Sequence record: OQ473814.1
Direction: 5' to 3' (one strand)
DNA length: 12,735 nucleotides
Shown here piece after piece: positions 1 to 12,735 of this stretch. The notes below the pieces were generated by a model. It worked only from the letters and a program-made list of their open reading frames with translations, had not been told where the DNA came from and ran no database searches. A program made the translations under genes and the position numbers. Numbering within the stretch: position 1 is the first letter of the stretch; every line of letters starts with the position of its first letter.

Positions 1-78
1 GCGTCTCGCGGCAGCGTCTCGCGGCAGCGTCTCGCGGCAGCGTCTCGCGGCAGCGTCTCGCGTCGGCGTCTCGCGAGG
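1..78 (+). repeat. Terminal tandem array of the 13-bp unit GCGTCTCGCGGCA
   Basis: Perfect units at 1-13, 14-26, 27-39 and 40-52; variants GCGTCTCGCGTCG (53-65) and GCGTCTCGCGAGG (66-78); CGAGG x3 at 74-88. Confidence 0.97.
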
Positions 79-201
79 CGAGGCGAGGCGTGAGGGTCGC
101 GAAGGGCAGCGCGTGGCATGGCGGACGCCCGCGGTCGCGGAGAGCCACGTGAGCGGAGCGTGGTCGAGGGGCGTAGGAGAGGAGGGCGTAGGAGAGAAGC
201 C
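1..201 (+). repeat. Left inverted terminal repeat (162-bp core 40-201 plus three extra 13-bp units at 1-39)
   Basis: 40-201 is the exact reverse complement of 12574-12735 (checked base by base); identity breaks at 202/12573. Confidence 0.98.
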
Positions 202-211
202 GGAGAGAAGC

Positions 212-271
212 GGACGGGTTAAGGGCGTTAGACCCGCCCCCCGCCTTAGGACGGAGTAGGGCGTTAGACCC
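212..271 (+). repeat. Subterminal direct repeat GGACGG-N3/4-AGGGCGTTAGACCC x2
   Basis: AGGGCGTTAGACCC is exact at 222-235 and 258-271, each preceded by GGACGG (212-217, 249-254). Confidence 0.85.
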
Positions 272-360
272 ATATCCCTAGGGGGGCAACTACCATGTCA
301 GACCCACGCAGACCCCGATCAGAATGAGCGTTGCCCCCCACATAAGGGTCGTGGCGGGGC

Positions 361-450
361 TTAAATAGGTTCGCCCCCGCGGTCGCGGTCTTCGCGGTAT
401 AGAAGGTCAAAGGGGATGCCGTGGTCCTTGAGGAGTTCGGGGAGGTTCAT
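361..450 (-). CDS. Small hypothetical protein, 29 aa (MNLPELLKDHGIPFDLLYREDRDRGGEPI), not in the ORF track
   Basis: ATG (450-448) overlaps the TGA of ORF 447-779 as ATGA; GAGGCG SD-like motif upstream; ends TAA at 363-361. Confidence 0.5.
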   Translation of the reverse strand: MNLPELLKDHGIPFDLLYREDRDRGGEPI

Positions 451-779
451 GTTGTCGCCTCTAGTCTCTTGAGACATTCACTGTACGGCAGAAATTTCGT
501 AGCCTCTTGGCATATGATGGGATAGAGTTCACGCGGTGGCGGTGAATTGTCTAGGTAGTCGGCAGCCGCGTCAATTAACTCTACGCAGAGTTTCTTGATG
601 CGGTCGTTATTGACGGACTTGAGGGTTACGATCGCGGACAGAACTAGGGATCTACCGTTAGCCCGTGATCTCCTACGGATATAGTTCGTTAGGCTAGTGG
701 ACAGGAGGTTCACGTAGACTTGATCCATGCCCTCTACGGGGATAGCCTCTAACTTAATTAGGAGGTCGCGGAGGGTCAT
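447..779 (-). CDS. Hypothetical alpha-helical protein, 110 aa; probable paralog of 12228-12572
   Basis: ATG coupled to the upstream stop (TAATG); VNLLSTSLTNYIR matches VNMLLNSLRLYLR of the right-terminal ORF. Confidence 0.85.
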   Translation of the reverse strand: MTLRDLLIKLEAIPVEGMDQVYVNLLSTSLTNYIRRRSRANGRSLVLSAIVTLKSVNNDRIKKLCVELIDAAADYLDNSPPPRELYPIICQEATKFLPYSECLKRLEATT

Positions 780-1486
780 TATTCATCACCCTTATTCAAT
801 TGGGATAGGTATTCTTGATAGTAGTAATGACCACGGCTTACTATCGTAAGTGCATGCTTACTGAACTTCCTATTGACTAGTTCGCCGGTATCCTCAATCA
901 AGATTAAGGCTTCGTAAGGCGTAACGCTATTGACTATACCGGTCCTTTCTTGATGCCCGTGCCATATCTTTACCGTGTCGCCCATGCATAGGACGTTAAA
1001 CCATACAAATTTGGCACAGTGCGTTGATATCATATCAAAGTACATCGAGGGGTCTCCGCGTTGTCCCGTTATGGGTTGTGGACCTCTAGTGATGTCTCTA
1101 GGCTTAGCCCTAGCCTTCTCAATCTCCGCCTCAAGTCTAGGCTTAACCGCGGGTATCATAATGTCCTCTTCTACGTCTATCTCTTCCTCTTCCTCTTTGC
1201 CCTGTAGGATATTGTAGGCGTACTGGACTAGTTTAGGGTCTACCTCGTACTCCTCAAGTATCCTAGAGAAGTCGGCGTATTCTTTGGCGTGTTCTCCCAT
1301 CATGTCAAAAATCTTAGGGAGAAGAATGTTGAGGTCCTTAACCCCGCTTAACTTAGATAGGTTGCGGGTATATCCCTCAACTTGTTTCTTTGCCTTCGGA
1401 TCACTTATTAACCCGATCAGGTCGTTATATGACTTGATCGGGGTCTTTTTTGGGGGTGAATCCCCCGCGTTTTGTGGGTTGTGCAT
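779..1486 (-). CDS. Hypothetical protein, 235 aa: helical N-domain, acidic linker, C-terminal SH3/KOW-like beta-barrel
   Basis: Long ORF with TTATAA 27-32 nt upstream; C-terminal GDTVKIWHG...TGIVNSV...ALILIEDTG pattern resembles KOW/SH3 barrels. Confidence 0.85.
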   Translation of the reverse strand: MHNPQNAGDSPPKKTPIKSYNDLIGLISDPKAKKQVEGYTRNLSKLSGVKDLNILLPKIFDMMGEHAKEYADFSRILEEYEVDPKLVQYAYNILQGKEEEEEIDVEEDIMIPAVKPRLEAEIEKARAKPRDITRGPQPITGQRGDPSMYFDMISTHCAKFVWFNVLCMGDTVKIWHGHQERTGIVNSVTPYEALILIEDTGELVNRKFSKHALTIVSRGHYYYQEYLSQLNKGDE

Positions 1487-1512
1487 TGTAGCCGATAATT
1501 CTTATTCGCCCC

Positions 1513-1518
1513 TTATAA
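1513..1518 (-). promoter_or_regulatory. TATA box for a probably leaderless leftward transcript (1486 -> 361)
   Basis: TTATAA lies 27-32 nt upstream of the ATG at 1486, the usual crenarchaeal leaderless spacing. Confidence 0.7.
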
Positions 1519-1655
1519 GTTGGCGTCGATAGGTACGATACTCGAACCTTATCTTGGCTAAGTGAATATAACGTGATTATCGGCAACTGAATATTTGGCA
1601 AATGCCGATATTATGAGGGTAAGCGTGAGAGGGTAGGTTAGGAGTTATAGGCAAG

Positions 1656-1665
1656 TATATATAAA
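1656..1665 (+). promoter_or_regulatory. TATA box (TATATATAAA) for the rightward early transcript
   Basis: Strongest AT-only element in the divergent intergenic region, preceded by purine-rich AGGCAAG (BRE-like) and ending 32 nt before ATG 1697. Confidence 0.7.
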
Positions 1666-1696
1666 GGGCGAGTGGGTAGGTAGGGATAGACCCAAA

Positions 1697-2080
1697 ATGT
1701 CAAATCCGAACCAAACCCAAAATCCGGGATTTGACGGGCTGGAGGCTTTTTTGGGGGAGAACGTAAGGACAACTATCTCCCTTTCGCCTAGTCAATCCCT
1801 TCTCGTGGTAGTCTTGAGCTACAAAGGTAAGAGGCAGTATAAGGGGAAGAACGGGGACTACGAGAAACTTGAGTTTGAGGTTAAGGTAGTCTCCGATAAC
1901 CTTAACGTGTACACGGGACTAGAGGGATCCCTTCTACTGAGTACCGCTCTGTACCCGCAAATTAGGAGGGCATTAACCAACAAGGAGACGTGCTGGAAGG
2001 TAACAAGGGGGAGAATAACGGAGTTGAGTAGTTTCCCCGCGGAGTTCTGTGCTAGCAAACTAGGAGGCGGGCAGGCATAA
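1697..2080 (+). CDS. Hypothetical protein, 127 aa; possible OB-fold ssDNA-binding protein
   Basis: First gene after the promoter; beta-rich pattern with a basic/aromatic hairpin (YKGKRQYKGKNGDYEKLEFEVKV), then a helix and WKVTR strand. CDS is secure; the fold call is tentative. Confidence 0.8.
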   Translation: MSNPNQTQNPGFDGLEAFLGENVRTTISLSPSQSLLVVVLSYKGKRQYKGKNGDYEKLEFEVKVVSDNLNVYTGLEGSLLLSTALYPQIRRALTNKETCWKVTRGRITELSSFPAEFCASKLGGGQA

Positions 2081-2091
2081 ACATCAACCAA

Positions 2092-2316
2092 ATGCAATTG
2101 CCCGAACAAGTTAAGGTCCACGCGTTCATGGATGATGACACGGAGATTACCATGGTAGTGGAAAGGTCCGATCTCCTAGAGTACGTGGAAGGGTTACGCG
2201 AGTTCTTAGTGGGGAAGGGATACAAGACTTCCACGTTTAAGGCAATCTCTAGGACCCATACCGTCTATATGACTTGGGACGCGGAGGGGTCTAACAGTGA
2301 GGATAGAGACGCTTAA
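2092..2316 (+). CDS. Hypothetical protein, 74 aa
   Basis: ATG 11 nt after the previous stop; fits the operon tiling. Confidence 0.8.
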   Translation: MQLPEQVKVHAFMDDDTEITMVVERSDLLEYVEGLREFLVGKGYKTSTFKAISRTHTVYMTWDAEGSNSEDRDA

Positions 2317-2479
2317 GGGGATAGTTAAGGAAGGTACCCGCGTTAAGGTAACTACGAACAACCACAGTTACGAGGGTACCATCTCCTACATGGATGACGC
2401 GGTTATCGTGAATACGGCGGACGGCAAAGTAGTCATAGTAGCCTCGGCGGTTAAGGAATTGACGGTATTGGGGGAGTAA
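2297..2479 (+). CDS. Sm/LSm/Hfq-like small beta-barrel protein, 60 aa
   Basis: GTG start with GGAGGGGT SD at 2283-2290; helix then [23 protein letters not shown]...[14 protein letters not shown] follows the Sm1/Sm2 pattern. CDS is likely; the fold is moderately supported. Confidence 0.7.
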   Translation: [60 protein letters not shown]

Positions 2480-2480
2480 C

Positions 2481-2657
2481 ATGACCCTTATCGTAATCAC
2501 GTTTAAGATAGACCGCGATACTCTAGACGTTTTGGACTCAGTGGCGGGGTCCCTCAAAATGAACAGGTCCGAGTTCATTAGGAGGGCGATAAGCCACGAG
2601 ATAGCGAGTTACGTGAATAAGGACGCAAAGGCTAGAGTTGAGAGGGTTAAGCTATGA
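2481..2657 (+). CDS. Ribbon-helix-helix (CopG/Arc/MetJ-like) DNA-binding protein, 58 aa; not in the ORF track
   Basis: MTLIVITFKIDRDTLDVLDSVAGSLKMNRSEFIRRAISHEIASYVNKDAKARVERVKL: ITFKID strand, helix, NRSEFIRRAI helix; GGGGAG SD; fills the gap exactly with an ATGA overlap at 2654-2657. Confidence 0.92.
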   Translation: MTLIVITFKIDRDTLDVLDSVAGSLKMNRSEFIRRAISHEIASYVNKDAKARVERVKL

Positions 2658-3061
2658 TCGACCTACCTATTCTTTCAATCGGACACTTTAAGGACGGCAG
2701 GACGGGGATGGAATTCAAGGGGATCATGATCTACAGTACTCAGACTTTCGTTATCGTAAAGGACCTAGACCATGAGAAATACTACTTGATCGAGCAGGAA
2801 AACGGCGGTGCCATGGATATCACGGAGGAGTGGACAAGTTACGTGAAAGAGCATGAGGACTTTGATAAAGCCGTAGACCTCACTATTTGGTTCATCAAGA
2901 AAAGCGTGCAGGCAGGGACGCCCGTAAATCCCTTAATCCCGCCTATGTTCGTGAACCAGATTGAGCCCGATATCGCGGAGATATTGAGGATCGTGCTAGC
3001 GAAACTTGAGAAAATGGTAGGGGAGGAGGAGGAAAATGCCGACACTCCTAGAGGAAACTGA
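2654..3061 (+). CDS. Hypothetical protein, 135 aa; probable paralog of 3036-3344
   Basis: ATGA-coupled to the RHH gene; YYLIEQENGGAMDITEEW motif resembles one in the next ORF. Confidence 0.85.
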   Translation: MIDLPILSIGHFKDGRTGMEFKGIMIYSTQTFVIVKDLDHEKYYLIEQENGGAMDITEEWTSYVKEHEDFDKAVDLTIWFIKKSVQAGTPVNPLIPPMFVNQIEPDIAEILRIVLAKLEKMVGEEEENADTPRGN

Positions 3062-3344
3062 CGGTAAGATTTATGTGTGGATAGATCCCGAACTCGTTAT
3101 CTACACTACGGACCGCGGGATCTACTTACAAACCGCGGACGGTAGAACCGTGGACGTAACCCACGCGTGGCAAAGGATTATGAGGAGTAACCCCGGCGAT
3201 TCAATCAAGATTTACTTGATCATGAACGCGGTCTACCTACGCAGAAAGTTCTACCATAAACCCGTGGATAGCCTAATTGAGGAATACGCGGAGTTAATCC
3301 GCCCTTACGTAGAACGACTAGTGAGGGAGGCCCTACGAGGATAG
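3036..3344 (+). CDS. Hypothetical protein, 102 aa; probable paralog of 2654-3061
   Basis: GGAGGAGG SD upstream of the ATG; motif IYLQTADGRTVDVTHAW. Confidence 0.85.
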   Translation: MPTLLEETDGKIYVWIDPELVIYTTDRGIYLQTADGRTVDVTHAWQRIMRSNPGDSIKIYLIMNAVYLRRKFYHKPVDSLIEEYAELIRPYVERLVREALRG

Positions 3345-3364
3345 ACCTATCCGATTGCTTTGAT

Positions 3365-3949
3365 ATGCCTAGGCTCACGAGTTTGGGCTTTAGGATAACT
3401 ACGCGGAGATGGACCATAGAGGACCTTAGCAAGATTGAGCAGTGTATGGGTGTGATTGAGAATTCCACGGAATTCCAAAGGTGCCTAGGTAGGAGGAGGA
3501 CGGACGTATTGGCGATCCGCAGGTATATCCTAGCTGTCCGTAACAAGGAAGCCCCGGCTATTCTCGTGGTACCGCCCGTTATTTCGGTGGAAGGGGTTCA
3601 ATCCGAACAGGGGGAGGAGGGGGGAGAAACGTGCAGTTCGATCGATGAGGGTGAACCCCTATGTGTATACGGGTGGTTTAACCCGGATTGCGTAGCGGAG
3701 GCAGTTACGGGTGCGTCTATGGACTACGCTACTGAACAAGCGGGGGATGAGGGTAGGATCAGGGTCAAATACGGGACGGGCGTAGAAGAACGCCCTTGTG
3801 ATAACCCGCAAATAGGTCCTATCGTAGATATCGAGTACCACGGGACTACAGTGTGCAGTGGCGAGGGATCCCTAGAGGAGTTAATGGAAGAGGCGTTACA
3901 ACACATAGATGAATACTTTGCGGAGATGGGGGAGGACTTCAATGAGTAG
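3365..3949 (+). CDS. Hypothetical protein, 194 aa: basic N-terminal Myb/SANT-like HTH candidate and acidic Cys-containing C-domain
   Basis: RRWTIEDLSKI...LGRRRTDVLAIRRYIL resembles the WT.E...LG.R...R Myb-type pattern; overlaps the next gene by 8 nt. Confidence 0.8.
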   Translation: MPRLTSLGFRITTRRWTIEDLSKIEQCMGVIENSTEFQRCLGRRRTDVLAIRRYILAVRNKEAPAILVVPPVISVEGVQSEQGEEGGETCSSIDEGEPLCVYGWFNPDCVAEAVTGASMDYATEQAGDEGRIRVKYGTGVEERPCDNPQIGPIVDIEYHGTTVCSGEGSLEELMEEALQHIDEYFAEMGEDFNE

Positions 3950-4313
3950 TTGGAGGGTACCCATAGACCCGGTTCACCCCTACGTAACGCTAGACTGGGA
4001 CGTGCGTTATGACACGCGACACTCTACCCTTAAGTGGCGGTCCATGGTAGCGTTTTTGACGGGGGCGGGGATTCACGAGGTCATGACAAGGCACAGTGCG
4101 GGCGGAAACACTCACGTGATCATTAAGTGGACCTACGACCTCACGTTTTGGGAGAGGCTAGTTATACGTTCAATTCTACAGGATGATCCCTACCGTATTA
4201 GTGCCGATATTAGACGTTACTACCGCGGTCTACCGGTTGAACGTTTATTCGGGATTAAGGCGACCCCGGGCGTTTTACGTAAAGCCGGACCGTGGACAAG
4301 AGAAACTTTTTAG
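3942..4313 (+). CDS. Minimal archaeo-eukaryotic primase (AEP)-like protein, 123 aa
   Basis: Start moved to ATG 3942 (GGAGGA SD at 3931-3936). Motif I VTLDWD (D18, D20), motif II RHSAGGNTHVII (S52, H58) and a motif III candidate QDDPYR (D81/D82) occur in AEP order. Confidence 0.7.
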   Translation: MSSWRVPIDPVHPYVTLDWDVRYDTRHSTLKWRSMVAFLTGAGIHEVMTRHSAGGNTHVIIKWTYDLTFWERLVIRSILQDDPYRISADIRRYYRGLPVERLFGIKATPGVLRKAGPWTRETF

Positions 4314-4335: not shown

Positions 4336-4773
4336 ATGAGCGAACCAAATTCTCAAGGGCAAACGGAGGGGTCTAACCCCGCGGAAAAGCCTAAATCTAC
4401 CCCGCCTTCTAAGGTGGAATGTAGAATTTGCGGTAAGAAAGTGAACCCCGCGGGTCTACCACGCCACGAGTGGAGTCATATACCCGACATATACGACAAA
4501 ATGAAAGAGTTAGAGAACAAAATCGCGGAGTTAAAGGCAGTTCAAACTCAACCCGCCCCGGCAGTACCCTCAACTAGTACTCAACCTAACCCCGGGGCCG
4601 CCCCGGCGACCGTGAAAGTTAAGGACGTTAAGCCGTTATTGGACACCGTGCTAGAGCATGTAAAGAGTTGTCCGGAGTGCCGTAGGGAGTTAGGGGAGTG
4701 GCTAACTCAGAATACGAAACAATTCGCTGAGTGGTTCGTACCGGAGGACCAAAGAAAGAGGCTTAGGCTATGA
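4336..4773 (+). CDS. Zinc-finger protein, 145 aa: C2H2 finger, coiled coil, Pro-rich linker, HxxxCxxC motif
   Basis: C29-x2-C32-x11-H44-x3-H48; heptad DKMKELENKIAELKA; H108-x3-C112-x2-C115. Confidence 0.88.
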   Translation: MSEPNSQGQTEGSNPAEKPKSTPPSKVECRICGKKVNPAGLPRHEWSHIPDIYDKMKELENKIAELKAVQTQPAPAVPSTSTQPNPGAAPATVKVKDVKPLLDTVLEHVKSCPECRRELGEWLTQNTKQFAEWFVPEDQRKRLRL

Positions 4774-5264
4774 AAATTGAGATTGATCACGATAACGCGG
4801 ACAATAACCCCGCGGAGGGGGAGGAGGTTGAGGTAGTTGAGGAGGTAACTAAGACTGAACCTACGCCCGCGACTCCTCAACCTCAACCCGTAACTCCTCA
4901 ACCCGCCCCCGTGGATCCCCGCGTGGATCAACTTGAGAGTAGGATAGCTCAACTAGAGAATTCCTTTACTCAACTTACGGACGCCCTTAACAAGTACTTT
5001 AATGCTCAAGGGCAGGGGCAGGTACCTCAAGGACAAGGGCAGGGAGGGATGGAATGGTTAGGTCCCGTAGCTCAACTCCTAGGTAGTCTCTTTCAATCCC
5101 GCGGTGGTAGTGATCAACTGACTAGCGTGTTGTTAGGGCTAGCGATCGATAACCTAAAATCTAGTGCAGAATTGAACAGGGCGGTGGCGGGGGCGGTAGT
5201 AAAGAAACTTTTAGGCGAGGCTATCGCTAGTGAACTAGGAGAGGTGGTTGTAAGTCATGAGTAA
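4770..5264 (+). CDS. Acidic/Pro-rich coiled-coil protein with amphipathic C-terminal helices, 164 aa (possible scaffold or assembly factor)
   Basis: ATGA overlap; E/P-rich N-terminus, VDQLESRIAQLENS heptads, QG-rich linker, WLGPVAQLLGSLF helix. Confidence 0.85.
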   Translation: MKIEIDHDNADNNPAEGEEVEVVEEVTKTEPTPATPQPQPVTPQPAPVDPRVDQLESRIAQLENSFTQLTDALNKYFNAQGQGQVPQGQGQGGMEWLGPVAQLLGSLFQSRGGSDQLTSVLLGLAIDNLKSSAELNRAVAGAVVKKLLGEAIASELGEVVVSHE

Positions 5265-5448
5265 CGTAAGTAAGAAAGTGGATGAAATAACGAGAAAGAT
5301 GCAAGTCTACGAGTTCGTTAAGAGCCTCGCCCTAACACTAGGTATCCCCTTCCCGGACGCTATGGTTAAGGCGTACATAATGAGAACCGACATCAACAAG
5401 ATTAATGCGATCATAGAGAAGACTAGGGAGTGGATTAAGCATGTCTGA
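5257..5448 (+). CDS. Small helical hypothetical protein, 63 aa
   Basis: 8-nt overlaps with both neighbours. Confidence 0.8.
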   Translation: MSNVSKKVDEITRKMQVYEFVKSLALTLGIPFPDAMVKAYIMRTDINKINAIIEKTREWIKHV

Positions 5449-6089: not shown

Positions 6090-6095
6090 AGGTGG
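6089..6095 (+). promoter_or_regulatory. Shine-Dalgarno GAGGTGG for 6101
   Basis: Archaeal consensus SD, 5 nt before the ATG. Confidence 0.8.
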
Positions 6096-6100
6096 ACTAA

Positions 6101-6925: not shown

Positions 6926-6954
6926 ATCCCCTTCCCCTTTCTATCTTGATAGTC

Positions 6955-7668
6955 ATGTCAAGTACCGGCGTGTTATGTCAAAAGGTAAGTAACATATCCC
7001 TAGGACCGCTATCGCTAGAGAACGCGGAGTTATGCTTTACGCAGACAGGTGAATACACGGGCAATATGAACGTAAAGGTATACTTCCTAGGCTATGACGT
7101 TATTAACGACAATTTCCCCGTAGCCCTCACGGTACCATGGTATCAGGCTAGTTCTCAAACTCAAGTTGCGGTACAGTTTGGTAATCCTATTACGGAGGAC
7201 GTAGTTACTCTCCTACTCAATATAGGGCAGGACATAAACGAGTTAGCTACCGCCCTAGGATACTCCGGTGTTCTTTCAATTACGGACGCCCATATAGACG
7301 CTAACGGCGATCTAGTCTTTACGGTGAACGCGACCTCTCCCCCCGTGATCATAATCCTCGCGATCATATTCGTGATCGCCCTAGCTATCCTAGTTTACAT
7401 AGGCGGACAAAGTGCCAGTGCCGTGATCACGTCAATTAACGGAGTTCAACCATCTCCGCCCAATTGTGCTAACTTAACCCAACAGGAATGTGCCCAACAG
7501 TACCAACTCTACTATCAGGCTTATCAGCAGTACTCTACGAACAAGGGTATCTCTAGCGTAGGCGTCTCCGTGTCCGGGATAGCGATCGCTCTAGGGATAG
7601 GTGCGGTCCTAATAGGCGGTATCGTACTAGCCAATAGGAGATCAAGACAAAGCGGTGTACCCACATGA
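6955..7668 (+). CDS. Virion membrane protein candidate, 237 aa: beta-rich N-domain, two TM helices, two Cys pairs
   Basis: ATG 6955 preferred over TTG 6946; TM1 VIIILAIIFVIALAILVYIGG, TM2 IAIALGIGAVLIGGIVLA followed by RRSR. Confidence 0.85.
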   Translation: MSSTGVLCQKVSNISLGPLSLENAELCFTQTGEYTGNMNVKVYFLGYDVINDNFPVALTVPWYQASSQTQVAVQFGNPITEDVVTLLLNIGQDINELATALGYSGVLSITDAHIDANGDLVFTVNATSPPVIIILAIIFVIALAILVYIGGQSASAVITSINGVQPSPPNCANLTQQECAQQYQLYYQAYQQYSTNKGISSVGVSVSGIAIALGIGAVLIGGIVLANRRSRQSGVPT

Positions 7669-7964
7669 CCGTACAACTCCTAACTAATGCGATCCAAACA
7701 ATTCACCAAAACGTGCAGAATGCCCCTAGGTATGACGTCAATATCAACGGTACCCTACACATAGTAGTAGCTCCGCAAAGTTCTGTGGTACTAACCCTAT
7801 GGTTAAACGGAATACCCGCAGTACTAAATCAAGGCAATAGTTTGTCAGGCGGGGCATGGTATGACTTTGACGGCATAGAGGTCCTACAGGGAGATGAAAT
7901 ACAAATTACGGGTAACGTGGACACGCAGGGATTTTTGCGAATGTATGTGAAAAGCGTATTTTAG
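7665..7964 (+). CDS. Small beta-sandwich (jelly-roll-like) minor structural protein, 99 aa
   Basis: ATGA overlap; all-beta pattern with LNQGNSLSGGAWYDFDGIEVLQGDEIQI. Confidence 0.8.
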   Translation: MTVQLLTNAIQTIHQNVQNAPRYDVNINGTLHIVVAPQSSVVLTLWLNGIPAVLNQGNSLSGGAWYDFDGIEVLQGDEIQITGNVDTQGFLRMYVKSVF

Positions 7965-8006
7965 GGGTGGTCCACTACGGATATAGTTACGGTAAGTGTT
8001 TTGACC

Positions 8007-8234
8007 ATGGAAAACGTGGTTACGTGGGTTTTACTTGCCCGAGTAAATGCGGGACTCGGGAAGGCTATCGAGCAGTGGACCCGTGCCCTAGATCACCTTA
8101 AGCAAAGTAACGAGGCTCTAGAGCGTGCTAGTCAGGAATTAGCTCAAGGTAATCAAGAGCTTAAGGAAGTTAAGGACCAACTAAGCATAATAGCCCAATT
8201 GCTCAAGTCATTAAGCGGAGGGTATCCCACATGA
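8007..8234 (+). CDS. Coiled-coil protein, 75 aa
   Basis: ATG 8007 (TTG 8001 alternative); long heptad run LDHLKQSNEALERASQELAQGNQELKEVKDQL. Confidence 0.8.
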   Translation: MENVVTWVLLARVNAGLGKAIEQWTRALDHLKQSNEALERASQELAQGNQELKEVKDQLSIIAQLLKSLSGGYPT

Positions 8235-8494
8235 GCGTAAATATCTCTGACGGGCTCTATAACTCGGGCGGTAACACCATGACCCCTACGCAATTTCTGA
8301 GTTCTCTAAATCAGGGGGGTAGTTCATGCCCCAATTGTCAATCCACTACGCAGTCTACCACGCAGTCTAGCGGTCAATCCATGCCCTCAACGATTAACGT
8401 ATCCATAAGGGGATATAACTTTGTGGACGTTATCATTATCGGGGCTCTAGTGTCCCTTACGGCGATAGCGAGTTACTACCTAGCCAAAAGTTAG
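8231..8494 (+). CDS. Tail-anchored small membrane protein with CPNC motif, 87 aa
   Basis: ATGA overlap; CPNC, QSTT/QSS repeats, C-terminal TM VDVIIIGALVSLTAIASYYLAK. Confidence 0.82.
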   Translation: MSVNISDGLYNSGGNTMTPTQFLSSLNQGGSSCPNCQSTTQSTTQSSGQSMPSTINVSIRGYNFVDVIIIGALVSLTAIASYYLAKS

Positions 8495-8496
8495 GG

Positions 8497-8502: not shown

Positions 8503-8533
8503 ATCTCGATTACGCTTTTTTCCATGAGACAGT

Positions 8534-9571
8534 ATGTTACGACCTACGATTGTAAAGGAAAGGGGTGTAATCTCTAGATATATCACGTCAATAGAGCCGG
8601 TTCTAACTACGTGGATGCATGACGCCGGTAGGGATGAACTCCCTAGCCTTATGAGATTAGCGGGTCTAGGTAGAAGACACGGTAAACTGTGGAGAGCTAG
8701 CCTACAGGGTAACGTAGGTCCCTTTACTAGGGACATAGAGATGCTTATCTTCCCGCCATTCTTGTTATCCACGGGACCTAGCGGACCCGTAACCGTGACC
8801 TATCCCCTTAACGGATCCTCGCCTATCTCCGCCACGACTTTCCTCCTAGATATTATCGCGGGCGGTGGTGCCGGTGGCGGGGGCGGTGGCGGTGGATCCT
8901 CCGCCCCCGGACAAGGTGGCGGTGGTGGTGCCGACGGCGGTAGGCTAGTGGTTAAGTTCAGTGGCGGTGCGATCGACACAGGTACAGTAACGGTACCCGG
9001 ACCTAGTGCCGGTGGTGCCGGTGGTTCAGGTGGTGCAGGATCTAACGGACAAAACGGCGGAAACACTACCGTTTCCTTAAACTCCGCGACCGCGACACTA
9101 CAGTCTCAGGGACTCCCCGCGTTTACCATGCCCGCCCCTGTAGGCGGACAATACGCCGGTGGGCAGGGTGGTGCGGGCGGTAACGCCGTACTACAATACG
9201 ATAAGAGCATCTCTCCCTCATTCTTCCTAGAGCTAGGCGGACTTAATCAAGGGGCTTACGCAAATAACTCGCAGATACTTAGCGACTCAGTAGGTACAGG
9301 GGGTTACGGAGTAAACTCGGAGTATCTCAACTTCTCAGGTAGAGGTCTATGGACTAGATCAACCGCGGGTGTAAGCGGTGGTGCAAATACGGGTTCAGGT
9401 ACCGCAGGTTCAGGTGGTGCTAACGCCTACGTAAACGTGCCCTCCGGGTCTATCTACGGTAGAGGTGCCGGTGCGGGCGGTGGCGGTGGCGGTTCAGGTA
9501 GCACGCCCGGGGCAGGTGGTCCCGGTGGACAAGGCGGTCCCGGACTTGTAATAATGCTAGTGGTGGCGTAA
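8534..9571 (+). CDS. Glycine-rich (polyglycine II bundle type) adhesin/spike candidate, 345 aa (alternative start ATG 8741, 276 aa)
   Basis: LLDIIAGGGAGGGG...GGGGADGG...GQNGGNTTV...GAGGPGGQGGPGLVIMLV matches the layout of Gly-rich domains of phage tail adhesins and ALK/LTK. Confidence 0.85.
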   Translation: MLRPTIVKERGVISRYITSIEPVLTTWMHDAGRDELPSLMRLAGLGRRHGKLWRASLQGNVGPFTRDIEMLIFPPFLLSTGPSGPVTVTYPLNGSSPISATTFLLDIIAGGGAGGGGGGGGSSAPGQGGGGGADGGRLVVKFSGGAIDTGTVTVPGPSAGGAGGSGGAGSNGQNGGNTTVSLNSATATLQSQGLPAFTMPAPVGGQYAGGQGGAGGNAVLQYDKSISPSFFLELGGLNQGAYANNSQILSDSVGTGGYGVNSEYLNFSGRGLWTRSTAGVSGGANTGSGTAGSGGANAYVNVPSGSIYGRGAGAGGGGGGSGSTPGAGGPGGQGGPGLVIMLVVA

Positions 9572-9572
9572 C

Positions 9573-11180
9573 ATGATACTAGTAACGTCAGGTGCAGGAG
9601 GTGGTTCAGGACCCACGACATCAACGACTCAGCAATCCGTACAGGTAATCAATAACTCAGATTATTACGTGCAGGTTGCGGTACAGGGACAGAACGCTCA
9701 ACTCAGTAGTTACGTGAATCTAGCCCCTAACGAAAGTAAGTTCATAAACTACGAGGGTACAGCGACCGGGCTCAGTGTAATCTACTTTACGGACTCCTCC
9801 TACTCCGTAAGTATCTATTCAACGACCCTTCCAATAGGTCCCTCCGTTATAGTACCTAACCCGCCCTCTCAGTATACCACGCCAAAGACTACGACCACTA
9901 GCTCTACGTCTAGCTCAAGTTCAGGATCCACTGGGACTAGCTCAACGTCTACGGGGACTAGTTCGGGGAGTTCGGGATCTACAGGGTCTACAGGATCCAC
10001 GGGGTCTAGCGGTTTTCAGCTCTGTTATCCTTCCTATATTACGCAGTATCAGAACTTCCCTACGGACTTCCTACCGGCTAACTGTAACGCCGGACAACTC
10101 AAGGCTTATGGTAATTTCAGTGTTCAATTCTTCTACGAGAACGGTAATCCCTACAACCTAGGAGTGTCTCAAGTTGAGGTTACGGTCTATCAGGGCTCTA
10201 CTATCGTGGACCAAGGTACCCTCCCCGTAACTCAGGGTGGTAGCGTAGTTCAGGGATGGTTCATATTCTTCTACGACCTACCTGACACTAAGGTCCACAT
10301 TAAGGTCCCTGTCCCTCAAGGTTATACAATACAAGGATTTACGCCACAGAACGGTTACGTGGACTACGTACTAGATTACGGTTACGCAGGGAGTGAGGGG
10401 ACTGAGGCTTACCTAGTGCAGATAACCCCTCAACCTACTCAACCACAAGGTACTCCGGTACAGGTTACGCTCATAAACGACCTAGGATGTACAGTTACGG
10501 TTACGTGGTCCGGCGGTTCAGTTACACTACAGGCAGGTCAATCCCAACAAGTTACGGTGCCGAGTTACCCGGACGCAGGGACGGAGTTCAACGTGTACCT
10601 ACCGGGTGCGACTAGCGGGTGCGGATCGAGTTTTGGACCAATTACCGCGAACCAAACTATCTATCTCAGTTACCTAGGGTGTAGTGTATGTCCCTCAACG
10701 ACCCCGCCAACGGGTGGACAAGGTGCTACGACTACCACGGGGACTACGACCACGACCTCTACCACTACCCCGCCAAGTTCAACCGTAACGACCACGCTAG
10801 TGAACCCGTGTAACGTTAAACTAACGGCGACCTATAACGGGCAGACCTACACGCTTAACCCGGGTTATAATCAACTTAATGGACCTCCGGGGACTATCAC
10901 CGTGTCCTATAACGGTCAGACCATAGGAGTCTATAACGCCGGGGGGATTCAGACAGTATCGTGTCCATCTCCTCCCTCAACTACGACCACTACGACCACT
11001 ACGACCACTACCACGACCGGGACCGGGACAGGGACAAGTACAGGGACAGGGACAGGTACTACTACCCCGCCCTCAACCACTCCGCCCTCAACTCCTATGA
11101 TAGACTACGTGATAATAGGCGGTGCCGTGGTAGGGCTAGGTGCCCTACTGTACTACCTTAACAAGAGGGGACGCAGATGA
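9573..11180 (+). CDS. Large modular tail-anchored spike/surface protein, 535 aa: beta domains joined by Ser/Thr/Gly/Pro stalks, C-terminal TM
   Basis: Beta-rich domains, three low-complexity linkers, 8 Cys, TM IDYVIIGGAVVGLGALLYYL followed by NKRGRR. Confidence 0.9.
   Translation: MILVTSGAGGGSGPTTSTTQQSVQVINNSDYYVQVAVQGQNAQLSSYVNLAPNESKFINYEGTATGLSVIYFTDSSYSVSIYSTTLPIGPSVIVPNPPSQYTTPKTTTTSSTSSSSSGSTGTSSTSTGTSSGSSGSTGSTGSTGSSGFQLCYPSYITQYQNFPTDFLPANCNAGQLKAYGNFSVQFFYENGNPYNLGVSQVEVTVYQGSTIVDQGTLPVTQGGSVVQGWFIFFYDLPDTKVHIKVPVPQGYTIQGFTPQNGYVDYVLDYGYAGSEGTEAYLVQITPQPTQPQGTPVQVTLINDLGCTVTVTWSGGSVTLQAGQSQQVTVPSYPDAGTEFNVYLPGATSGCGSSFGPITANQTIYLSYLGCSVCPSTTPPTGGQGATTTTGTTTTTSTTTPPSSTVTTTLVNPCNVKLTATYNGQTYTLNPGYNQLNGPPGTITVSYNGQTIGVYNAGGIQTVSCPSPPSTTTTTTTTTTTTTGTGTGTSTGTGTGTTTPPSTTPPSTPMIDYVIIGGAVVGLGALLYYLNKRGRR
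10980..11054 (+). repeat. Coding tandem repeats (ACTACGACC x3, then GGGACA-type hexamers) encoding the Thr and Thr-Gly stalk
   Basis: ACTACGACC at 10980-11006; GGGACC/GGGACA/AGTACA units at 11019-11054. Confidence 0.85.
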
Positions 11181-11566
11181 GCATCAACATAAATACCCCT
11201 ACGATCACTTTCACGAACAACACCAACTACTACGTGCAGGTAGGCTTTAACATACCCGGAGTAGGGCTATTCTTCCTATCAGGACCCTCCCTAAATCAAG
11301 AACTCCTAGTGAACCCCGGGCAGACCGTAACCGCTCAACTACCCGGGACGCCCGACACTATCCTCCTCTATCTCTTCCAATCTTCCAACATAATGGAAGG
11401 TCCTGTACGTACTATCCAACAAGGCATTAACGGACAAACTAACTTTGTCCTCAACAATAACGGTCTATCCACGGTAGGGGCAAGTTCAGGTCCAGATATA
11501 GGTCTACTCATAGGCATAGGCGTACTCGCCCTACTCCTCATAGCCCTAGCCTACTCAAGGAAGTAA
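11177..11566 (+). CDS. Tail-anchored single beta-domain protein, 129 aa; related to the N-domain of 9573-11180
   Basis: NNTNYYVQV vs NNSDYYVQV; C-terminal TM IGLLIGIGVLALLLIALAY followed by SRK. Confidence 0.87.
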   Translation: MSININTPTITFTNNTNYYVQVGFNIPGVGLFFLSGPSLNQELLVNPGQTVTAQLPGTPDTILLYLFQSSNIMEGPVRTIQQGINGQTNFVLNNNGLSTVGASSGPDIGLLIGIGVLALLLIALAYSRK

Positions 11567-11569
11567 ACC

Positions 11570-11575
11570 TTTTTT
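11570..11575 (+). terminator. Oligo-T terminator
   Basis: T6 starting 4 nt after TAA 11566. Confidence 0.65.
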
Positions 11576-11600
11576 CTTCACGTGTCTATTTGTATACGCC

Positions 11601-11888
11601 ATGAGTCAGCCAAGTGGTGGAAGTAGCTCAACCGACTATAGGGACGGGATTATCCACGGCTTTGTCCTCGCCTTGATCCTAGCGTTAATAGGGTTCTTAC
11701 TAGGCTATGTTGTATACAACTTGAGCGTAATGAACTATATCCTCTTTAACGCGATCAACTCCTCCGTTATCGCGGGGAAGATAGTAACCGGCAATTTGTC
11801 CATGAGTGGCTTTCTACCCTATATGTTCGCCCTTGTGGGGGCGGTCCTAGGTTTCGCCATAGGGTTCATGCGGGAAGTGATAGAGTAG
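11601..11888 (+). CDS. Two-TM membrane protein, 95 aa
   Basis: Two long hydrophobic helices (GIIHGFVLALILALIGFLLGYVVY; FLPYMFALVGAVLGFAIGF); flanked by T-tracts. Confidence 0.85.
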   Translation: MSQPSGGSSSTDYRDGIIHGFVLALILALIGFLLGYVVYNLSVMNYILFNAINSSVIAGKIVTGNLSMSGFLPYMFALVGAVLGFAIGFMREVIE

Positions 11889-11922
11889 TTTCGGTGTCCC
11901 GCCCCAACCTCTTAAGCAATCC

Positions 11923-11928
11923 TTTTTT
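11923..11928 (+). terminator. Oligo-T terminator
   Basis: T6 in the 11889-11940 intergenic gap. Confidence 0.55.
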
Positions 11929-11940
11929 CAGGCGATCCAT

Positions 11941-12231
11941 GTGTCCACGACTCAGGAAATAAGTTACGTGTCCATGACCGCCCGCATAGACCGGGTGGTC
12001 CAAACTCTTCTACCCGTGTTAGATGAACCCCGTAAGGCAGAACTAGAATACGTGAGATCCATGGTATACGGTCTCCGTGAGGCTAGGACTGTCCTCCCTA
12101 CGATCCATATGCTAGAGATGTTCGCCCTTACGTTAAGGGGTTCAGAGGCGGAGAGAGAGGCTTACCACGTGATAAGGTCCATGGTTAAGGACCTCAAACT
12201 CGTGTATAACGGTAACGGGGTGCTAATATGA
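11941..12231 (+). CDS. Helical hypothetical protein, 96 aa (alternative start ATG 11974, 85 aa)
   Basis: GTG 11941 has CTTAAG about 25 nt upstream; in-frame ATG 11974 gives MTARID, echoing MTAKLE of the next gene. Confidence 0.8.
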   Translation: MSTTQEISYVSMTARIDRVVQTLLPVLDEPRKAELEYVRSMVYGLREARTVLPTIHMLEMFALTLRGSEAEREAYHVIRSMVKDLKLVYNGNGVLI

Positions 12232-12572
12232 CCGCGAAACTAGAGGCTTACGTAGACTACCTTGAGGAGATTAAGCCCTACCTCAACGAGAAGGATATAT
12301 CCACGGTTAATATGCTCCTCAACTCCCTCAGGCTCTACCTCCGCTATCCCGACCTAGAGACCGGCATAATGCTACGAACCTCCGCGACCTTAACCTCCGC
12401 TTATGTCCGCATGACTAGGGCTACGGAGATACTCGTGGATATCCGCGACGTATTCTTGAGGGTGCTAGACGAATACGCCCGCGAACTGATCCAAGAGATG
12501 AACGACCGACTCCGGTTAATCCGCCCCTCCCTCTACGTGATCGATCCGCAGACCCTCGCGAAGGTGGAGTGA
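12228..12572 (+). CDS. Helical hypothetical protein, 114 aa; probable paralog of 447-779
   Basis: ATGA overlap; the stop abuts the right ITR; VNMLLNSLRLYLR motif. Confidence 0.85.
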   Translation: MTAKLEAYVDYLEEIKPYLNEKDISTVNMLLNSLRLYLRYPDLETGIMLRTSATLTSAYVRMTRATEILVDIRDVFLRVLDEYARELIQEMNDRLRLIRPSLYVIDPQTLAKVE

Positions 12573-12573
12573 A

Positions 12574-12735
12574 GGCTTCTCTCCTACGCCCTCCTCTCCT
12601 ACGCCCCTCGACCACGCTCCGCTCACGTGGCTCTCCGCGACCGCGGGCGTCCGCCATGCCACGCGCTGCCCTTCGCGACCCTCACGCCTCGCCTCGCCTC
12701 GCGAGACGCCGACGCGAGACGCTGCCGCGAGACGC
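12574..12735 (-). repeat. Right inverted terminal repeat (162 bp)
   Basis: Exact reverse complement of 40-201; carries one perfect 13-bp unit plus the two variant units. Confidence 0.98.

What the first reader, a model, noticed from the sequence alone, without database searches (positions are those of the whole stretch)
1..12735. Self-contained 12.7-kb linear archaeal virus genome with no recognisable polymerase, helicase, Rep or packaging ATPase
Seen: ITRs at both ends and about 30 tiled genes; the only proteins over 240 aa are the two structural ones; no valid Walker A, PolB or HUH motif in any ORF. Known: linear viral genomes solve end replication with protein-primed PolB (Ampullaviridae, tectiviruses, adenoviruses), hairpin ends with Rep/resolvase (rudiviruses) or protelomerase. 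Inference: this genome uses another route. From memory and unverified, it resembles small ITR-bearing Sulfolobales viruses such as Metallosphaera turreted icosahedral virus and Sulfolobales Beppu virus 1, so it may be a relative rather than wholly new.
Basis: partly seen in the sequence, partly recalled or inferred. Interest (0 to 1): 0.75.

Follow-up and report, generated by a model that had tools for sequence, protein, structure and literature searches.

The report
Published MTIV3 archaeal virus genome
The window is the already published genome of Metallosphaera turreted icosahedral virus 3; it really does lack any recognisable polymerase or packaging motor, and one small conserved gene (ORF14) is a testable candidate for how such viruses start copying their DNA.

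Summary
A perfect 162-nt inverted terminal repeat sits at both ends, there are about 29 tiled genes, and no Walker A, PolB or HUH motif appears in any real ORF. Pfam, PHROGs and NCBIfam find no replicase or ATPase. The window is not new: it is 100% identical over all 12,735 nt to GenBank OQ473814.1 (MTIV3, host Metallosphaera prunae D4-4, published 2023). The missing replicase has been an open point for MTIVs since 2017-18.

New here:
- **ORF14.** This core gene (MTIV1 c109) belongs to an unannotated family of at least 198 clusters. Its predicted fold is RRM-like, and its near-invariant motifs resemble primase-polymerase (AEP) motifs I and II. Homologues occur in AFV1 and HCIV-1. Statistical support for AEP homology is weak.
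- **Capsid protein.** It is homologous to SPV1 VP4 (E 1.3e-7), which suggests an explanation for the missing packaging ATPase.
- **Termini.** Relatives end in 5' poly-C, which this record lacks, so its ends are probably truncated.

Best reading: the host replisome copies the genome, with a virus-encoded initiator acting at the repeats.

The parts
1..201 (.). Left inverted terminal repeat. Positions 40-201 are the perfect 162-nt arm. Positions 1-75 hold a 13-nt tandem array (GCGTCTCGCGGCA x5.8), followed by GCGAG x3.6 and 15-nt and 11-nt repeats that look like iterons.
   Evidence: No unusual single-strand fold (z = +0.94).
12574..12735 (.). Right inverted terminal repeat, with only 2.8 copies of the 13-nt unit at the tip.
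447..779 (-). ORF3 (110 aa), leftward gene with no relatives found.
779..1486 (-). ORF4 (235 aa), leftward and the largest non-structural protein, with an acidic linker. Conserved only in the nearest relative L041 (38% identity). No family or PDB match.
1697..2316 (+). ORF7 (1697-2080) and ORF8 (2092-2316), early rightward genes conserved only in L041.
2297..2479 (+). Unannotated + strand ORF of 60 aa. It is the likely real gene here, rather than GenBank ORF9 on the - strand.
   Evidence: 57% identity to a called gene in L041. Also called in L053 and L056.
2481..2657 (+). ORF10, a ribbon-helix-helix (CopG-type) transcription regulator.
   Evidence: Pfam RHH_1 4e-8; PHROG 876 4e-10.
2654..3344 (+). 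ORF11 (2654-3061) and ORF12 (3036-3344), unknown function, conserved only in L041.
3365..3949 (+). ORF13 (194 aa; MTIV1 a188), a core gene. It has an N-terminal three-helix (HTH-like) region and a conserved Cys/Trp/Pro-rich C-terminal part. Proposed ITR-binding partner of ORF14.
   Evidence: Alignment A2. AF2 model poor overall (pLDDT 49), with helices 18-59 at 72-85. Homologues found only in the MTIV/SPV3 group.
3942..4313 (+). ORF14 (123 aa; MTIV1 c109), a core gene. It has an RRM-like fold with near-invariant D18/D20, R50, S52, H58, R76, D81/D82, R85, D89, R92, K106 and W118. Candidate AEP/Rep-like replication initiator.
4336..4773 (+). ORF15 (145 aa; MTIV1 c125), a core gene with an N-terminal C2HC-type zinc finger and a C-terminal CxxC.
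   Evidence: Pfam zf-C2HC_2 6e-5, below cutoff. Homologues.
4770..5448 (+). ORF16 (4770-5264; MTIV1 c153, core, Pro/Gln-rich with a coiled coil) and ORF17 (5257-5448).
5441..5764 (+). ORF18 (MTIV1 virion protein c105). Possibly an Erv/ALR-like sulfhydryl oxidase.
   Evidence: PHROG 32547 5e-17. All 8 listed PDB profile hits are Erv/ALR oxidases, the best at E 0.06.
5805..6481 (+). ORF19 (5805-6089; MTIV1 b88) and ORF20 (6101-6481; a109), small virion proteins.
   Evidence: MTIV1 annotation
6493..6909 (+). ORF21, the major capsid protein (MTIV1 c137), homologous to SPV1 VP4.
   Evidence: 48% identity to c137 and 58% to the SPV3 homologue. Profile A6 against PDB 6oj0 VP4 gives E 1.3e-7. Pfam SPV1_VP4 0.0068.
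6946..7964 (+). ORF22 (6946-7668; c225, with two membrane spans) and ORF23 (7665-7964; b94), core genes of the structural module.
8001..8494 (+). ORF24 (coiled coil) and ORF25 (C-terminal membrane span).
8534..9571 (+). ORF26 (345 aa; MTIV1 virion protein a339), glycine-rich, probably a vertex or turret protein.
   Evidence: PHROG 30830 3e-33; Pfam Gly_rich_2 4e-5.
9573..11566 (+). ORF27 (9573-11180; 535 aa, Thr/Ser-rich linkers between beta-rich modules, C-terminal anchor) and ORF28 (11177-11566, a weak paralogue). Putative surface or receptor-binding proteins.
   Evidence: No relatives found.
11601..12572 (+). ORF29 (membrane protein), ORF31 (11941-12231) and ORF32 (12228-12572), right-end genes of unknown function.

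Best explanation
Shown: the window is the genome of MTIV3, a linear dsDNA virus of Metallosphaera with an internal membrane. It carries a 162-201-nt ITR and the 11-gene MTIV core. It encodes no polymerase, helicase, HUH Rep, recombinase or packaging ATPase that profile methods can recognise. Inferred mechanism, step 1: DNA elongation is done by the host replisome. Step 2: initiation and end maintenance are directed by the virus's conserved non-structural core block, ORF13-ORF14-ORF15, acting on the repeat-rich ITR. In that block, ORF13 (HTH-like) and ORF15 (zinc finger) would supply DNA recognition. ORF14 is the likely catalytic or initiator subunit. It is a single RRM-like module whose near-invariant hhhDhD, S-x2-G-x2-H and (in most relatives) hD-x-K motifs mimic motifs I-III of AEP primase-polymerases. 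It would prime, or extend by terminal-transferase-like activity, at the simple-repeat termini. Step 3: no packaging motor is needed. The capsid protein is homologous to SPV1 VP4, so the shell may assemble around condensed DNA, as I recall being described for SPV1.
For: Identity: (100% over 12,735 nt); PMC10101205. Absence of enzymes. The same absence is reported for MTIV4 (five predicted functions only; bioRxiv 10.64898/2026.06.04.730037). ORF14: alignments A3 and A4 give D18 116/116, D20 115, S52 116, H58 114, D82 116, R85 116 and K106 112. The AF2 model has pLDDT 87 and a beta-alpha-beta-beta-alpha-beta topology. Nine of the ten best Foldseek PDB hits are AEP Prim-Pols (Prim-PolC, LigD PolDom, NHEJ polymerase), followed by HUH Rep and origin-binding domains. 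Those domains are the fold's known nearest relatives (PMC4538821). Both hhalign runs align H58 onto the pRN1 motif II histidine. Family spread: 198 clusters. Members include AFV1 ORF144 and HCIV-1 ORF36. HCIV-1 is reported to have no canonical DNA polymerase motifs (PMC4958249). All sampled contigs are small, show no Pfam hits, and place the gene 1-4 kb from an end. Ends: iteron-like repeats in the ITR. Relatives have homopolymer or short-repeat termini, sometimes with unequal copy number at the two ends. Capsid: profile A6 against SPV1 VP4 gives E 1.3e-7.
Against: No statistically significant link between ORF14 and AEPs. The best Foldseek PDB hit is E 0.056 with TM 0.41-0.53. hhalign aligns only 8-14 columns (probability 0.2-1.5%). 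HMM searches against PDB and Pfam find nothing. [quoted passage not shown] The motif III-like Asp (position 104) is Gly in MTIV3 itself and Leu in its nearest relative. The invariant DD(81/82) sits in a helix-helix loop of the model, not on a strand. ORF13 and ORF15 roles are guesses; the ORF13 model is poor, and distant ORF14-bearing contigs have different neighbours. The association with terminal repeats is a correlation drawn from a handful of genomes. Nothing was tested biochemically.
Confidence: 0.4

Rival explanations
1. Protein-primed replication without a viral polymerase. A virus-encoded terminal protein, covalently attached to the 5' ends, primes synthesis by a host polymerase. The terminal repeats would allow slide-back. 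ORF14, with its invariant Ser52, or another small protein, would be the primer protein rather than an enzyme.
For: ITRs with repeated terminal nucleotides are the hallmark of protein-primed genomes. Relatives end in C6-C14. An ORF14 homologue is present in HCIV-1. HCIV-1 probably has terminal proteins, and no canonical polymerase motifs were found in it (PMC4958249). The review PMC5867849 lists protein priming as one of two open options for MTIV.
Against: No known protein-primed system uses a cellular polymerase; all characterised ones encode their own pPolB. No terminal protein has been reported for MTIV in the papers I could read. Fourteen invariant or near-invariant polar residues in ORF14 look more like an active site than a primer protein.
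Confidence: 0.2
2. Recombination- or strand-invasion-driven replication using host enzymes only, as proposed for AFV1 (from my memory of Pina et al. 2014). The ITRs and terminal tandem repeats would invade sister molecules, or form concatemers, to regenerate the ends. ORF14 would be only a sequence-specific ITR-binding protein of the Rep/OBD fold.
For: The OBD/Rep fold is among the Foldseek hits (PCV2 Rep, AAV OBD, RepB). AFV1 carries a family member. Repeat copy number is unequal at the two ends of MTIV3, MTIV2 and L051, as unequal recombination would give. MTIV3 lacks the motif III-like Asp.
Against: The unequal copy numbers may be short-read assembly artefacts. Paired invariant acidic residues plus His, Ser and Lys are unusual for a pure DNA binder. 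No viral recombinase or nuclease was detected.
Confidence: 0.2
3. Covalently closed hairpin ends with self-priming and nick resolution, as in rudiviruses, poxviruses or parvoviruses.
For: The genome is linear with ITRs. PMC5867849 mentions self-priming as the other option for MTIV.
Against: The terminal 201 nt fold no better than shuffled sequence (z +0.94, with 167 of 200 shuffles folding at least as well). The 13-nt unit is not palindromic. No HUH Rep, Holliday-junction resolvase or protelomerase was found. The recorded tips may be incomplete, so this is not excluded.
Confidence: 0.05
4. The replicase is simply missing, because the contig is incomplete or part of a larger or segmented genome.
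For: GenBank labels the record 'partial genome'. The tips lack the poly-C seen in relatives.
Against: ITRs bound both ends. MTIV1, MTIV2 and MTIV4 are 9.8-13.9 kb and also lack a replicase (the bioRxiv preprint). The longest of ten independent contigs carrying the identical ORF14 ends inside the ITRs. What is missing is probably about 100 nt of repeat per end, not genes.
Confidence: 0.03

Closest known systems
Metallosphaera turreted icosahedral viruses MTIV1/MTIV2 (MF443783, MF443784) and MTIV4 (preprint)
   Same: Linear dsDNA with ITRs. The same 11 core genes in the same order (ORF13-16, 18-23, 26). Capsid protein 48% identical. No polymerase or ATPase. Metallosphaera hosts.
   Different: MTIV3 is larger than MTIV1/2 (12.7 against 9.8-9.9 kb). 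It has a leftward gene pair (ORF3, ORF4) and different early and late accessory genes. Its recorded ends are 13-nt tandem repeats instead of C11-C12. Nucleotide similarity is absent.
Sulfolobus polyhedral virus 3 / 'STIV3' (OQ473816)
   Same: By core-gene identity it is closer to MTIV3 than MTIV1/2 are (33-58% across all 11 core genes).
   Different: 18 kb, with no ITR in the record, a Sulfolobus host, and two diverged copies of part of the core module. The source paper reported only one shared gene.
Sulfolobus polyhedral virus 1 (Portogloboviridae; PDB 6oj0)
   Same: Homologous major capsid protein (VP4, E 1.3e-7). From my memory of the SPV1 literature: an icosahedral particle with an internal membrane and no packaging ATPase.
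   Different: The SPV1 genome is circular (from my own knowledge). No other MTIV3 protein matched a solved structure of SPV1.
Alphasphaerolipoviruses (SH1, HHIV-2, HCIV-1)
   Same: Linear dsDNA, ITRs with simple-repeat tips, an internal membrane and no canonical DNA polymerase (PMC4958249). HCIV-1 ORF36 and an HHIV-2 protein belong to, or resemble, the ORF14 family.
   Different: About 31 kb. Unrelated capsid proteins. They encode a packaging ATPase. Haloarchaeal hosts.
Acidianus filamentous virus 1 (Ungulaviridae)
   Same: Linear dsDNA with repeat-rich, telomere-like ends (CG7, then T/G-rich pentamers). ORF144 is a member of the ORF14 family.
   Different: Filamentous enveloped virion. Unrelated structural genes. 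20.9 kb.
AEP primase-polymerases (LigD PolDom, Prim-PolC, pRN1 ORF904, PriS)
   Same: RRM-like catalytic module. ORF14 has hhhDhD on the first strand, a small-x-His motif at the beta hairpin, and an invariant Ser six residues before the His. From memory, that Ser matches the SGxxGxH motif of PriS and LigD. Most relatives also have hD.
   Different: [quoted passage not shown] No significant sequence or profile similarity. The third acidic motif is absent in MTIV3.

Membership tests
MTIV group (unclassified Metallosphaera turreted icosahedral viruses) | Sequence identity to a described member | tested here: met
   100% over 12,735 nt to OQ473814.1 MTIV3.
MTIV group (unclassified Metallosphaera turreted icosahedral viruses) | Shared core gene set (11 single-copy proteins, per the MTIV4 preprint), including capsid protein c137 | tested here: met
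   ORF13-16, 18-23 and 26 have homologues in MTIV1/2 or related contigs.
MTIV group (unclassified Metallosphaera turreted icosahedral viruses) | Linear genome with ITRs of 109-353 bp | tested here: met
   162-nt perfect ITR, or 201 nt counting the extra repeat copies.
MTIV group (unclassified Metallosphaera turreted icosahedral viruses) | Homopolymer C (5') / G (3') at the extreme termini | tested here: not met
   Present in MTIV1, MTIV2, L005, L008/L028, L031 and L041 but absent from this record. The likely reason is truncated ends (the record is labelled 'partial genome').
Portogloboviridae (SPV1-like) | VP4-type major capsid protein | tested here: met
   Profile A6 against 6oj0 VP4 gives E 1.3e-7 over 101 positions.
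Portogloboviridae (SPV1-like) | Circular dsDNA genome | tested here: not met
   Linear with ITRs at both ends. An independent assembly stops inside the ITRs.
Portogloboviridae (SPV1-like) | Other SPV1 virion proteins | tested here: inconclusive
   Profiles of ORF22 and ORF23 gave no significant PDB match. The SPV1 genome was not available for a direct comparison.
AEP (archaeo-eukaryotic primase / Prim-Pol) superfamily, for ORF14 | C-terminal RRM-like catalytic unit | tested here: met
   AF2 model with pLDDT 87 and beta-alpha-beta-beta-alpha-beta topology. AEPs dominate the top Foldseek PDB hits.
AEP (archaeo-eukaryotic primase / Prim-Pol) superfamily, for ORF14 | [quoted passage not shown] | tested here: not met
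   The protein and its 198-cluster family are mostly 105-150 aa, with the first motif at residues 15-20.
AEP (archaeo-eukaryotic primase / Prim-Pol) superfamily, for ORF14 | Motif I, hhhDhD/E | tested here: met
   V-T-L-D-W-D. D18 is present in 116/116 members and D20 in 115/116, on the first strand.
AEP (archaeo-eukaryotic primase / Prim-Pol) superfamily, for ORF14 | Motif II, sxH | tested here: met
   S52-x2-G55-N-x-H58. H58 is present in 114/116 members, at the hairpin between strands 46-51 and 56-67. hhalign places it on pRN1 H145.
AEP (archaeo-eukaryotic primase / Prim-Pol) superfamily, for ORF14 | Motif III, hD/E | tested here: inconclusive
   R-L-(F/W)-D-x-K carries D or E in 96/116 members, but Gly in MTIV3. 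The invariant D81/D82 pair is an alternative but lies in a loop.
AEP (archaeo-eukaryotic primase / Prim-Pol) superfamily, for ORF14 | Statistically supported homology to a known AEP | tested here: not met
   Foldseek best E 0.056. hhalign probability 0.2-1.5%. No Pfam or PDB HMM hit.
Protein-primed pPolB replicons (Tectiviridae, Ampullaviridae, Halspiviridae, adenoviruses) | Family B protein-primed DNA polymerase gene | tested here: not met
   No PolB motif or profile hit in any frame.
Protein-primed pPolB replicons (Tectiviridae, Ampullaviridae, Halspiviridae, adenoviruses) | Covalently bound terminal protein | not testable with these tools
   This needs virion DNA biochemistry.
Hairpin-ended Rep/resolvase replicons (Rudiviridae-like) | HUH Rep and Holliday-junction resolvase | tested here: not met
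   No HUH motif and no profile hit.
Hairpin-ended Rep/resolvase replicons (Rudiviridae-like) | Covalently closed or palindromic termini | tested here: inconclusive
   The recorded 201 nt fold no better than shuffles, but the tips are probably missing.

The most novel reading that the evidence does not exclude
ORF14 and its relatives (at least 198 clusters) would be a previously unrecognised minimal, single-module offshoot of the AEP/Rep RRM fold. It would act as a primase, terminal transferase or nucleotidylated initiator at simple-repeat telomeres. It would form a shared replication module of polymerase-less linear dsDNA archaeal viruses with unrelated capsids: MTIV/SPV3, AFV1-type filamentous viruses and alphasphaerolipoviruses.
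Probability: 0.25. Interest if true: 0.8.

Novelty: already known. Interest (0 to 1): 0.35.

Why it matters
How small linear archaeal viruses with no polymerase copy their ends has been open since MTIV (2017) and SH1 (2008). This window adds no new virus. The analysis does point to one small, highly conserved and easily expressed protein, ORF14, with enzyme-like conservation. Its relatives occur in three structurally unrelated groups of linear archaeal viruses, which makes the question directly testable at the bench. The capsid link to SPV1 also suggests why no packaging motor is present. It ties the unclassified MTIV group to an established family by its capsid but not by its replication mode.

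Tried and rejected
- **Hidden pPolB, ATPase, Rep or recombinase.** Searched with Pfam, PHROGs and NCBIfam on all ORFs, plus six-frame motif scans of the window and 39 relatives. Nothing found.
- **Replicase in the larger relative SPV3.** Ten of its biggest ORFs gave only the glycine-rich structural domain.
- **ORF14 against PDB and Pfam by sequence profile.** No hit.
- **hhalign of the family against pRN1 ORF904**, alone and as a 74-sequence profile. Only motif II aligned, and not significantly.
- **ORF13 structure.** The model was too poor to search with. A PDB profile search found nothing.
- **ORF4.** No PDB or family hit.
- **ORF22 and ORF23 profiles against PDB**, looking for further SPV1 links. 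Nothing significant.
- **Proviruses in reference genomes.** None found. Broader alignments were too diverse for that tool.
- **The 13-nt terminal repeat in IMG/VR.** No match.
- **A single-protein search of IMG/VR.** Nothing until an alignment was used.
- **Hairpin or self-priming ends.** No excess folding.
- **A conserved ORF13-like or zinc-finger neighbour beside distant ORF14 homologues.** Not found.
- **Wagner et al. 2017.** Not held in the library.

Full report
**Identity.**
A megablast of the whole window against the phage/archaeal-virus collection returned one full-length match. [quoted passage not shown] The host is Metallosphaera prunae D4-4, from hot-spring sediment in China. The record carries 33 CDS, all 'hypothetical protein', and is titled 'partial genome'. 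The virus is described in PMC10101205: 12,735 bp, 33 ORFs, 51.1% GC, spherical 50-55 nm particles with vertex complexes and host-derived lipids. Six ORFs had BLASTp homologues in the MTIVs. A 2026 preprint on MTIV4 (10.64898/2026.06.04.730037) treats MTIV1-4 as one group with 11 core proteins and ITRs of 109-353 bp. It assigns a function to only five MTIV4 genes: one repressor and four virion proteins. An independent public assembly (Logan SRR29654726) reproduces window 172-12,603 at 99.9% and stops inside both ITRs.

**Check of the observation.**
- *ITR.* Window 40-201 and 12,574-12,735 are perfectly complementary over 162 nt. The left end has three more copies of the 13-nt unit GCGTCTCGCGGCA, giving 5.8 copies against 2.8. 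Inside the ITR there are further short arrays: GCGAG x3.6, a 15-mer x2 and an 11-mer x1.9.
- *Proteins over 240 aa.* Only ORF26 (345 aa) and ORF27 (535 aa).
- *Motifs.* A six-frame scan found no strict Walker A, PolB motif A or C, or HUH in any open frame of 60 aa or more. The same scan over 39 related loci gave only scattered hits, mostly in antisense frames.
- *Profiles.* Pfam, PHROGs and NCBIfam gave no replication, recombination or packaging enzyme. The only confident functional domain is the ribbon-helix-helix fold of ORF10.

So the description is correct. What is wrong is the implication that the sequence is unknown.

**Relatives and core.**
An alignment of capsid proteins recovered 4 IMG/VR and 32 metagenome loci of the MTIV type. 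tblastn of every window protein against them shows homologues for ORF13, 14, 15, 16, 18, 19, 20, 21, 22, 23 and 26, and for nothing else. These match MTIV1 a188, c109, c125, c153, c105, b88, a109, c137, c225, b94 and a339 in the same order. 'Sulfolobus polyhedral virus 3' (the STIV3 of the paper, OQ473816) shares all eleven at 33-58% identity, which is higher than MTIV1/2 do. The paper states that only one gene is shared. A 5.6-kb Logan contig (L041) is nearer still, at 38-89% amino-acid identity. It also conserves ORF4, 7, 8, 10, 11 and 12, and a + strand 60-aa ORF at 2297-2479. That ORF should replace GenBank's - strand ORF9.

**Capsid and the missing packaging motor.**
A 28-sequence profile of ORF21/c137 matches the major capsid protein VP4 of Sulfolobus polyhedral virus 1 (PDB 6oj0) at E 1.3e-7 over about 100 positions. 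The single sequence gave a sub-threshold Pfam SPV1_VP4 hit. From my memory of the SPV1 structural work, that virus also lacks a packaging ATPase and builds its shell around a condensed nucleoprotein. If so, the homology offers a ready explanation for the absent ATPase in MTIV3. This step is inference. No other structural protein matched a solved structure.

**A candidate replication protein: sequence and fold.**
Among the four conserved non-structural core genes, the ORF14 alignment stood out. It shows I-T-L-D-x-D near the N-terminus, then R-x-S-x-x-G-N-x-H-h-x-h, then L-x-D-D-x-x-R-I-x-x-D-x-x-R and R-L-(F/W)-D-x-K.
- *Family size.* A profile search of 1.84 billion representative proteins found 198 clusters at E of 1e-3 or better. 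All listed members are 77-237 aa, and the 116 aligned members have no Pfam family.
- *Conservation over 116 members.* D18 116, D20 115, R50 115, S52 116, H58 114, R76 115, D81 113, D82 116, R85 116, D89 115, R92 112, K106 112 and W118 115. That density of invariant polar residues suggests an active site.
- *Structure.* AlphaFold2 gives a confident model (pLDDT 87, pTM 0.78) with beta(12-22)-alpha-alpha-beta(46-51)-beta(56-67)-alpha-alpha-beta topology, which is an RRM/ferredoxin-like unit. The DxD lies on the first strand and the His at the hairpin.
- *PDB fold search.* Foldseek found nothing at E of 1e-3 or better. Nine of the ten best hits are AEP primase-polymerases: Prim-PolC (E 0.056), LigD PolDom (probability up to 0.85, TM up to 0.53) and an archaeal NHEJ polymerase. 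HUH Rep and origin-binding domains follow. PMC4538821 names these as the nearest structural relatives of the AEP fold, and gives the defining AEP motifs as hhhDhD/E, sxH and hD/E (also PMC5862659).
- *Viral fold search.* Against predicted viral structures the significant hits are MTIV1 c109, an unnamed 116-aa protein, AFV1 ORF144 (4e-4), a betalipothrixvirus protein (8e-4) and an HHIV-2 protein (4e-3).
- *Local profile search.* A local hmmsearch confirms AFV1 ORF144 (34 bits) and HCIV-1 ORF36 (36 bits), with the same motifs. HCIV-1 reads S-S-S-G-G-G-L-H.

**A candidate replication protein: limits.**
The AEP link is not statistically established.
- hhalign against pRN1 ORF904, alone and as a 74-sequence profile, aligns only 8-14 columns around motif II. 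It does place H58 on the catalytic H145, but with probability 0.2-1.5%.
- The motif III-like Asp is Gly in MTIV3 and Leu in L041.

I therefore do not file ORF14 as an AEP. I describe it as an AEP/Rep-like RRM-fold protein with enzyme-like conservation. ORF13 upstream has an HTH-like three-helix region, but its model is poor. ORF15 downstream has a C2HC-type zinc finger. Neither neighbour is conserved beside distant family members.

**Ends.**
Complete or end-reaching relatives begin with pyrimidine homopolymers:
- MTIV1: C12 at both ends.
- MTIV2: C11 and C12.
- L005: C6 at both ends.
- L008/L028/L031: CCTCCTC8.
- L041: C14.

The preprint gives (GA)5GGAT(G)11 for MTIV4. In L041, a 13-nt-period array sits 85 nt inside the C14 tip. 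By analogy, the MTIV3 record starts inside its 13-nt array, has unequal copy numbers at the two ends and is labelled partial. It probably lacks roughly 80-100 nt, plus a homopolymer, at each end. This is inference.

Other genomes that carry the ORF14 family also have simple-repeat tips:
- AFV1: CG7 followed by T/G-rich pentamers.
- HCIV-1: CA(TC)8T (PMC4958249).
- A 9.9-kb ENA contig (L051): an ITR of about 87 nt tipped by CACAG/CACAT repeats, with unequal copy number.

The recorded ITR does not fold better than shuffled sequence (z +0.94). This gives no support to hairpin self-priming.

**Mechanism.**
The most likely picture (confidence about 0.4):
- Host polymerases elongate.
- The ORF13-15 block recognises the repeat-rich ITR.
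- ORF14 provides priming or end-extension chemistry.
- Assembly needs no ATPase.

The rivals are:
- Protein priming by a viral terminal protein with a host polymerase (0.2).
- Recombination-driven end maintenance, with ORF14 as a mere DNA binder (0.2).
- Hairpin ends (0.05).
- A missing genome part (0.03).

HCIV-1 shares this gene and has no identifiable polymerase (PMC4958249), and AFV1 shares the gene too. This is the main reason to think ORF14 is tied to replication rather than to virion structure.

**Novelty and score.**
The window itself is already known, being identical to a published isolate. The absence of a replicase in MTIVs is already on record as an open question (PMC5867849). The added value is a concrete, testable candidate, a capsid link to SPV1, and corrections to the public annotation. 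Interest 0.35. If the ORF14 family proves to be a minimal primase-like initiator shared by several polymerase-less linear archaeal viruses (probability about 0.25), it would merit about 0.8.

Noticed in passing
L003 (OQ473816.1, SPV3/'STIV3') 2368-5569 and 13702-16796: The record shares all 11 MTIV core genes with MTIV3, although the source paper says only one gene is shared. It also holds two diverged copies of part of the core module: ORF14 homologues at 4455-4874 and 15920-16411, ORF13-like at 4835-5569 and 16299-16796, and capsid at 2368-2781 and 13702-13896. It has no ITR. It may be a chimeric assembly of two related viruses, or a real duplication.
   Followed up: partly
window 5441-5764 (ORF18): The virion protein c105 family has an invariant C-x6-C-W-G-P..W ... 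P-C-P-x-C ... F-x-H-D-x-V-N...G pattern. All 8 listed hits of its profile against the PDB are Erv/ALR FAD-linked sulfhydryl oxidases (best E 0.06, sub-threshold). It is possibly a virion-borne thiol oxidase like those of large eukaryotic DNA viruses.
   Followed up: partly
window 2291-2578 (-) versus 2297-2479 (+): GenBank ORF9 on the minus strand is probably a miscall. The plus-strand 60-aa ORF is conserved (57% identity) and is called as a gene in L041, L053 and L056.
   Followed up: yes
window 1-273 (-), 113-259 (+), 12421-12657 (-), 12516-12662 (-): ORFs that lie inside the ITR (GenBank ORF1 and ORF33, and mirror-image 48-aa ORFs with the same N-terminal peptide) are by-products of the GC-rich repeat. 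They have no homologues.
   Followed up: partly
window 9573-11566 (ORF27, ORF28): ORF28 looks like a single-module paralogue of ORF27. They share NN(S/T)xYYVQV near the N-terminus, a second similar stretch (pairwise E 6e-4), and a C-terminal membrane anchor. ORF27 has poly-Thr/Ser/Gly linkers between its modules.
   Followed up: partly
L051 (ENA ERZ27237313 k141_457005) 1-110 and its right end: A 9,861-nt contig with no Pfam hits has an ITR of about 87 nt tipped by CACAG/CACAT pentamer repeats, with about 24 nt more on one end. It carries an ORF14-family gene at 1611-2018. It appears to be another small linear virus of unknown type.
   Followed up: partly
L043 (Logan ERR13950625) 1-24: The contig starts with an Illumina adapter remnant (TGTGCTCTTCCGATCT) directly followed by C8. 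This is either a true poly-C genome terminus or a library-tailing artefact. The contig carries an ORF14-family gene at 1652-2026.
   Followed up: no
L048 (HCIV-1 KT809302) 4339-5370, ORF35: The gene just downstream of the HCIV-1 ORF14-family member contains VVVLYFGDFNPSGYH. From memory this resembles a Toprim-type motif. It was not tested.
   Followed up: no
L042, L043, L051: genes immediately upstream of the ORF14-family gene: The upstream proteins (137-180 aa) share a YEVS(V/I)YG-like motif and a basic N-terminus with one another, but are not detectably related to ORF13. They may be a different conserved partner.
   Followed up: no
L049 (AFV1 NC_005830) 1-10 and its right end: Both ends of the AFV1 record begin CGGGGGGGA before the known T/G-rich pentanucleotide clusters. 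This is a homopolymer tip reminiscent of the MTIV poly-C.
   Followed up: no
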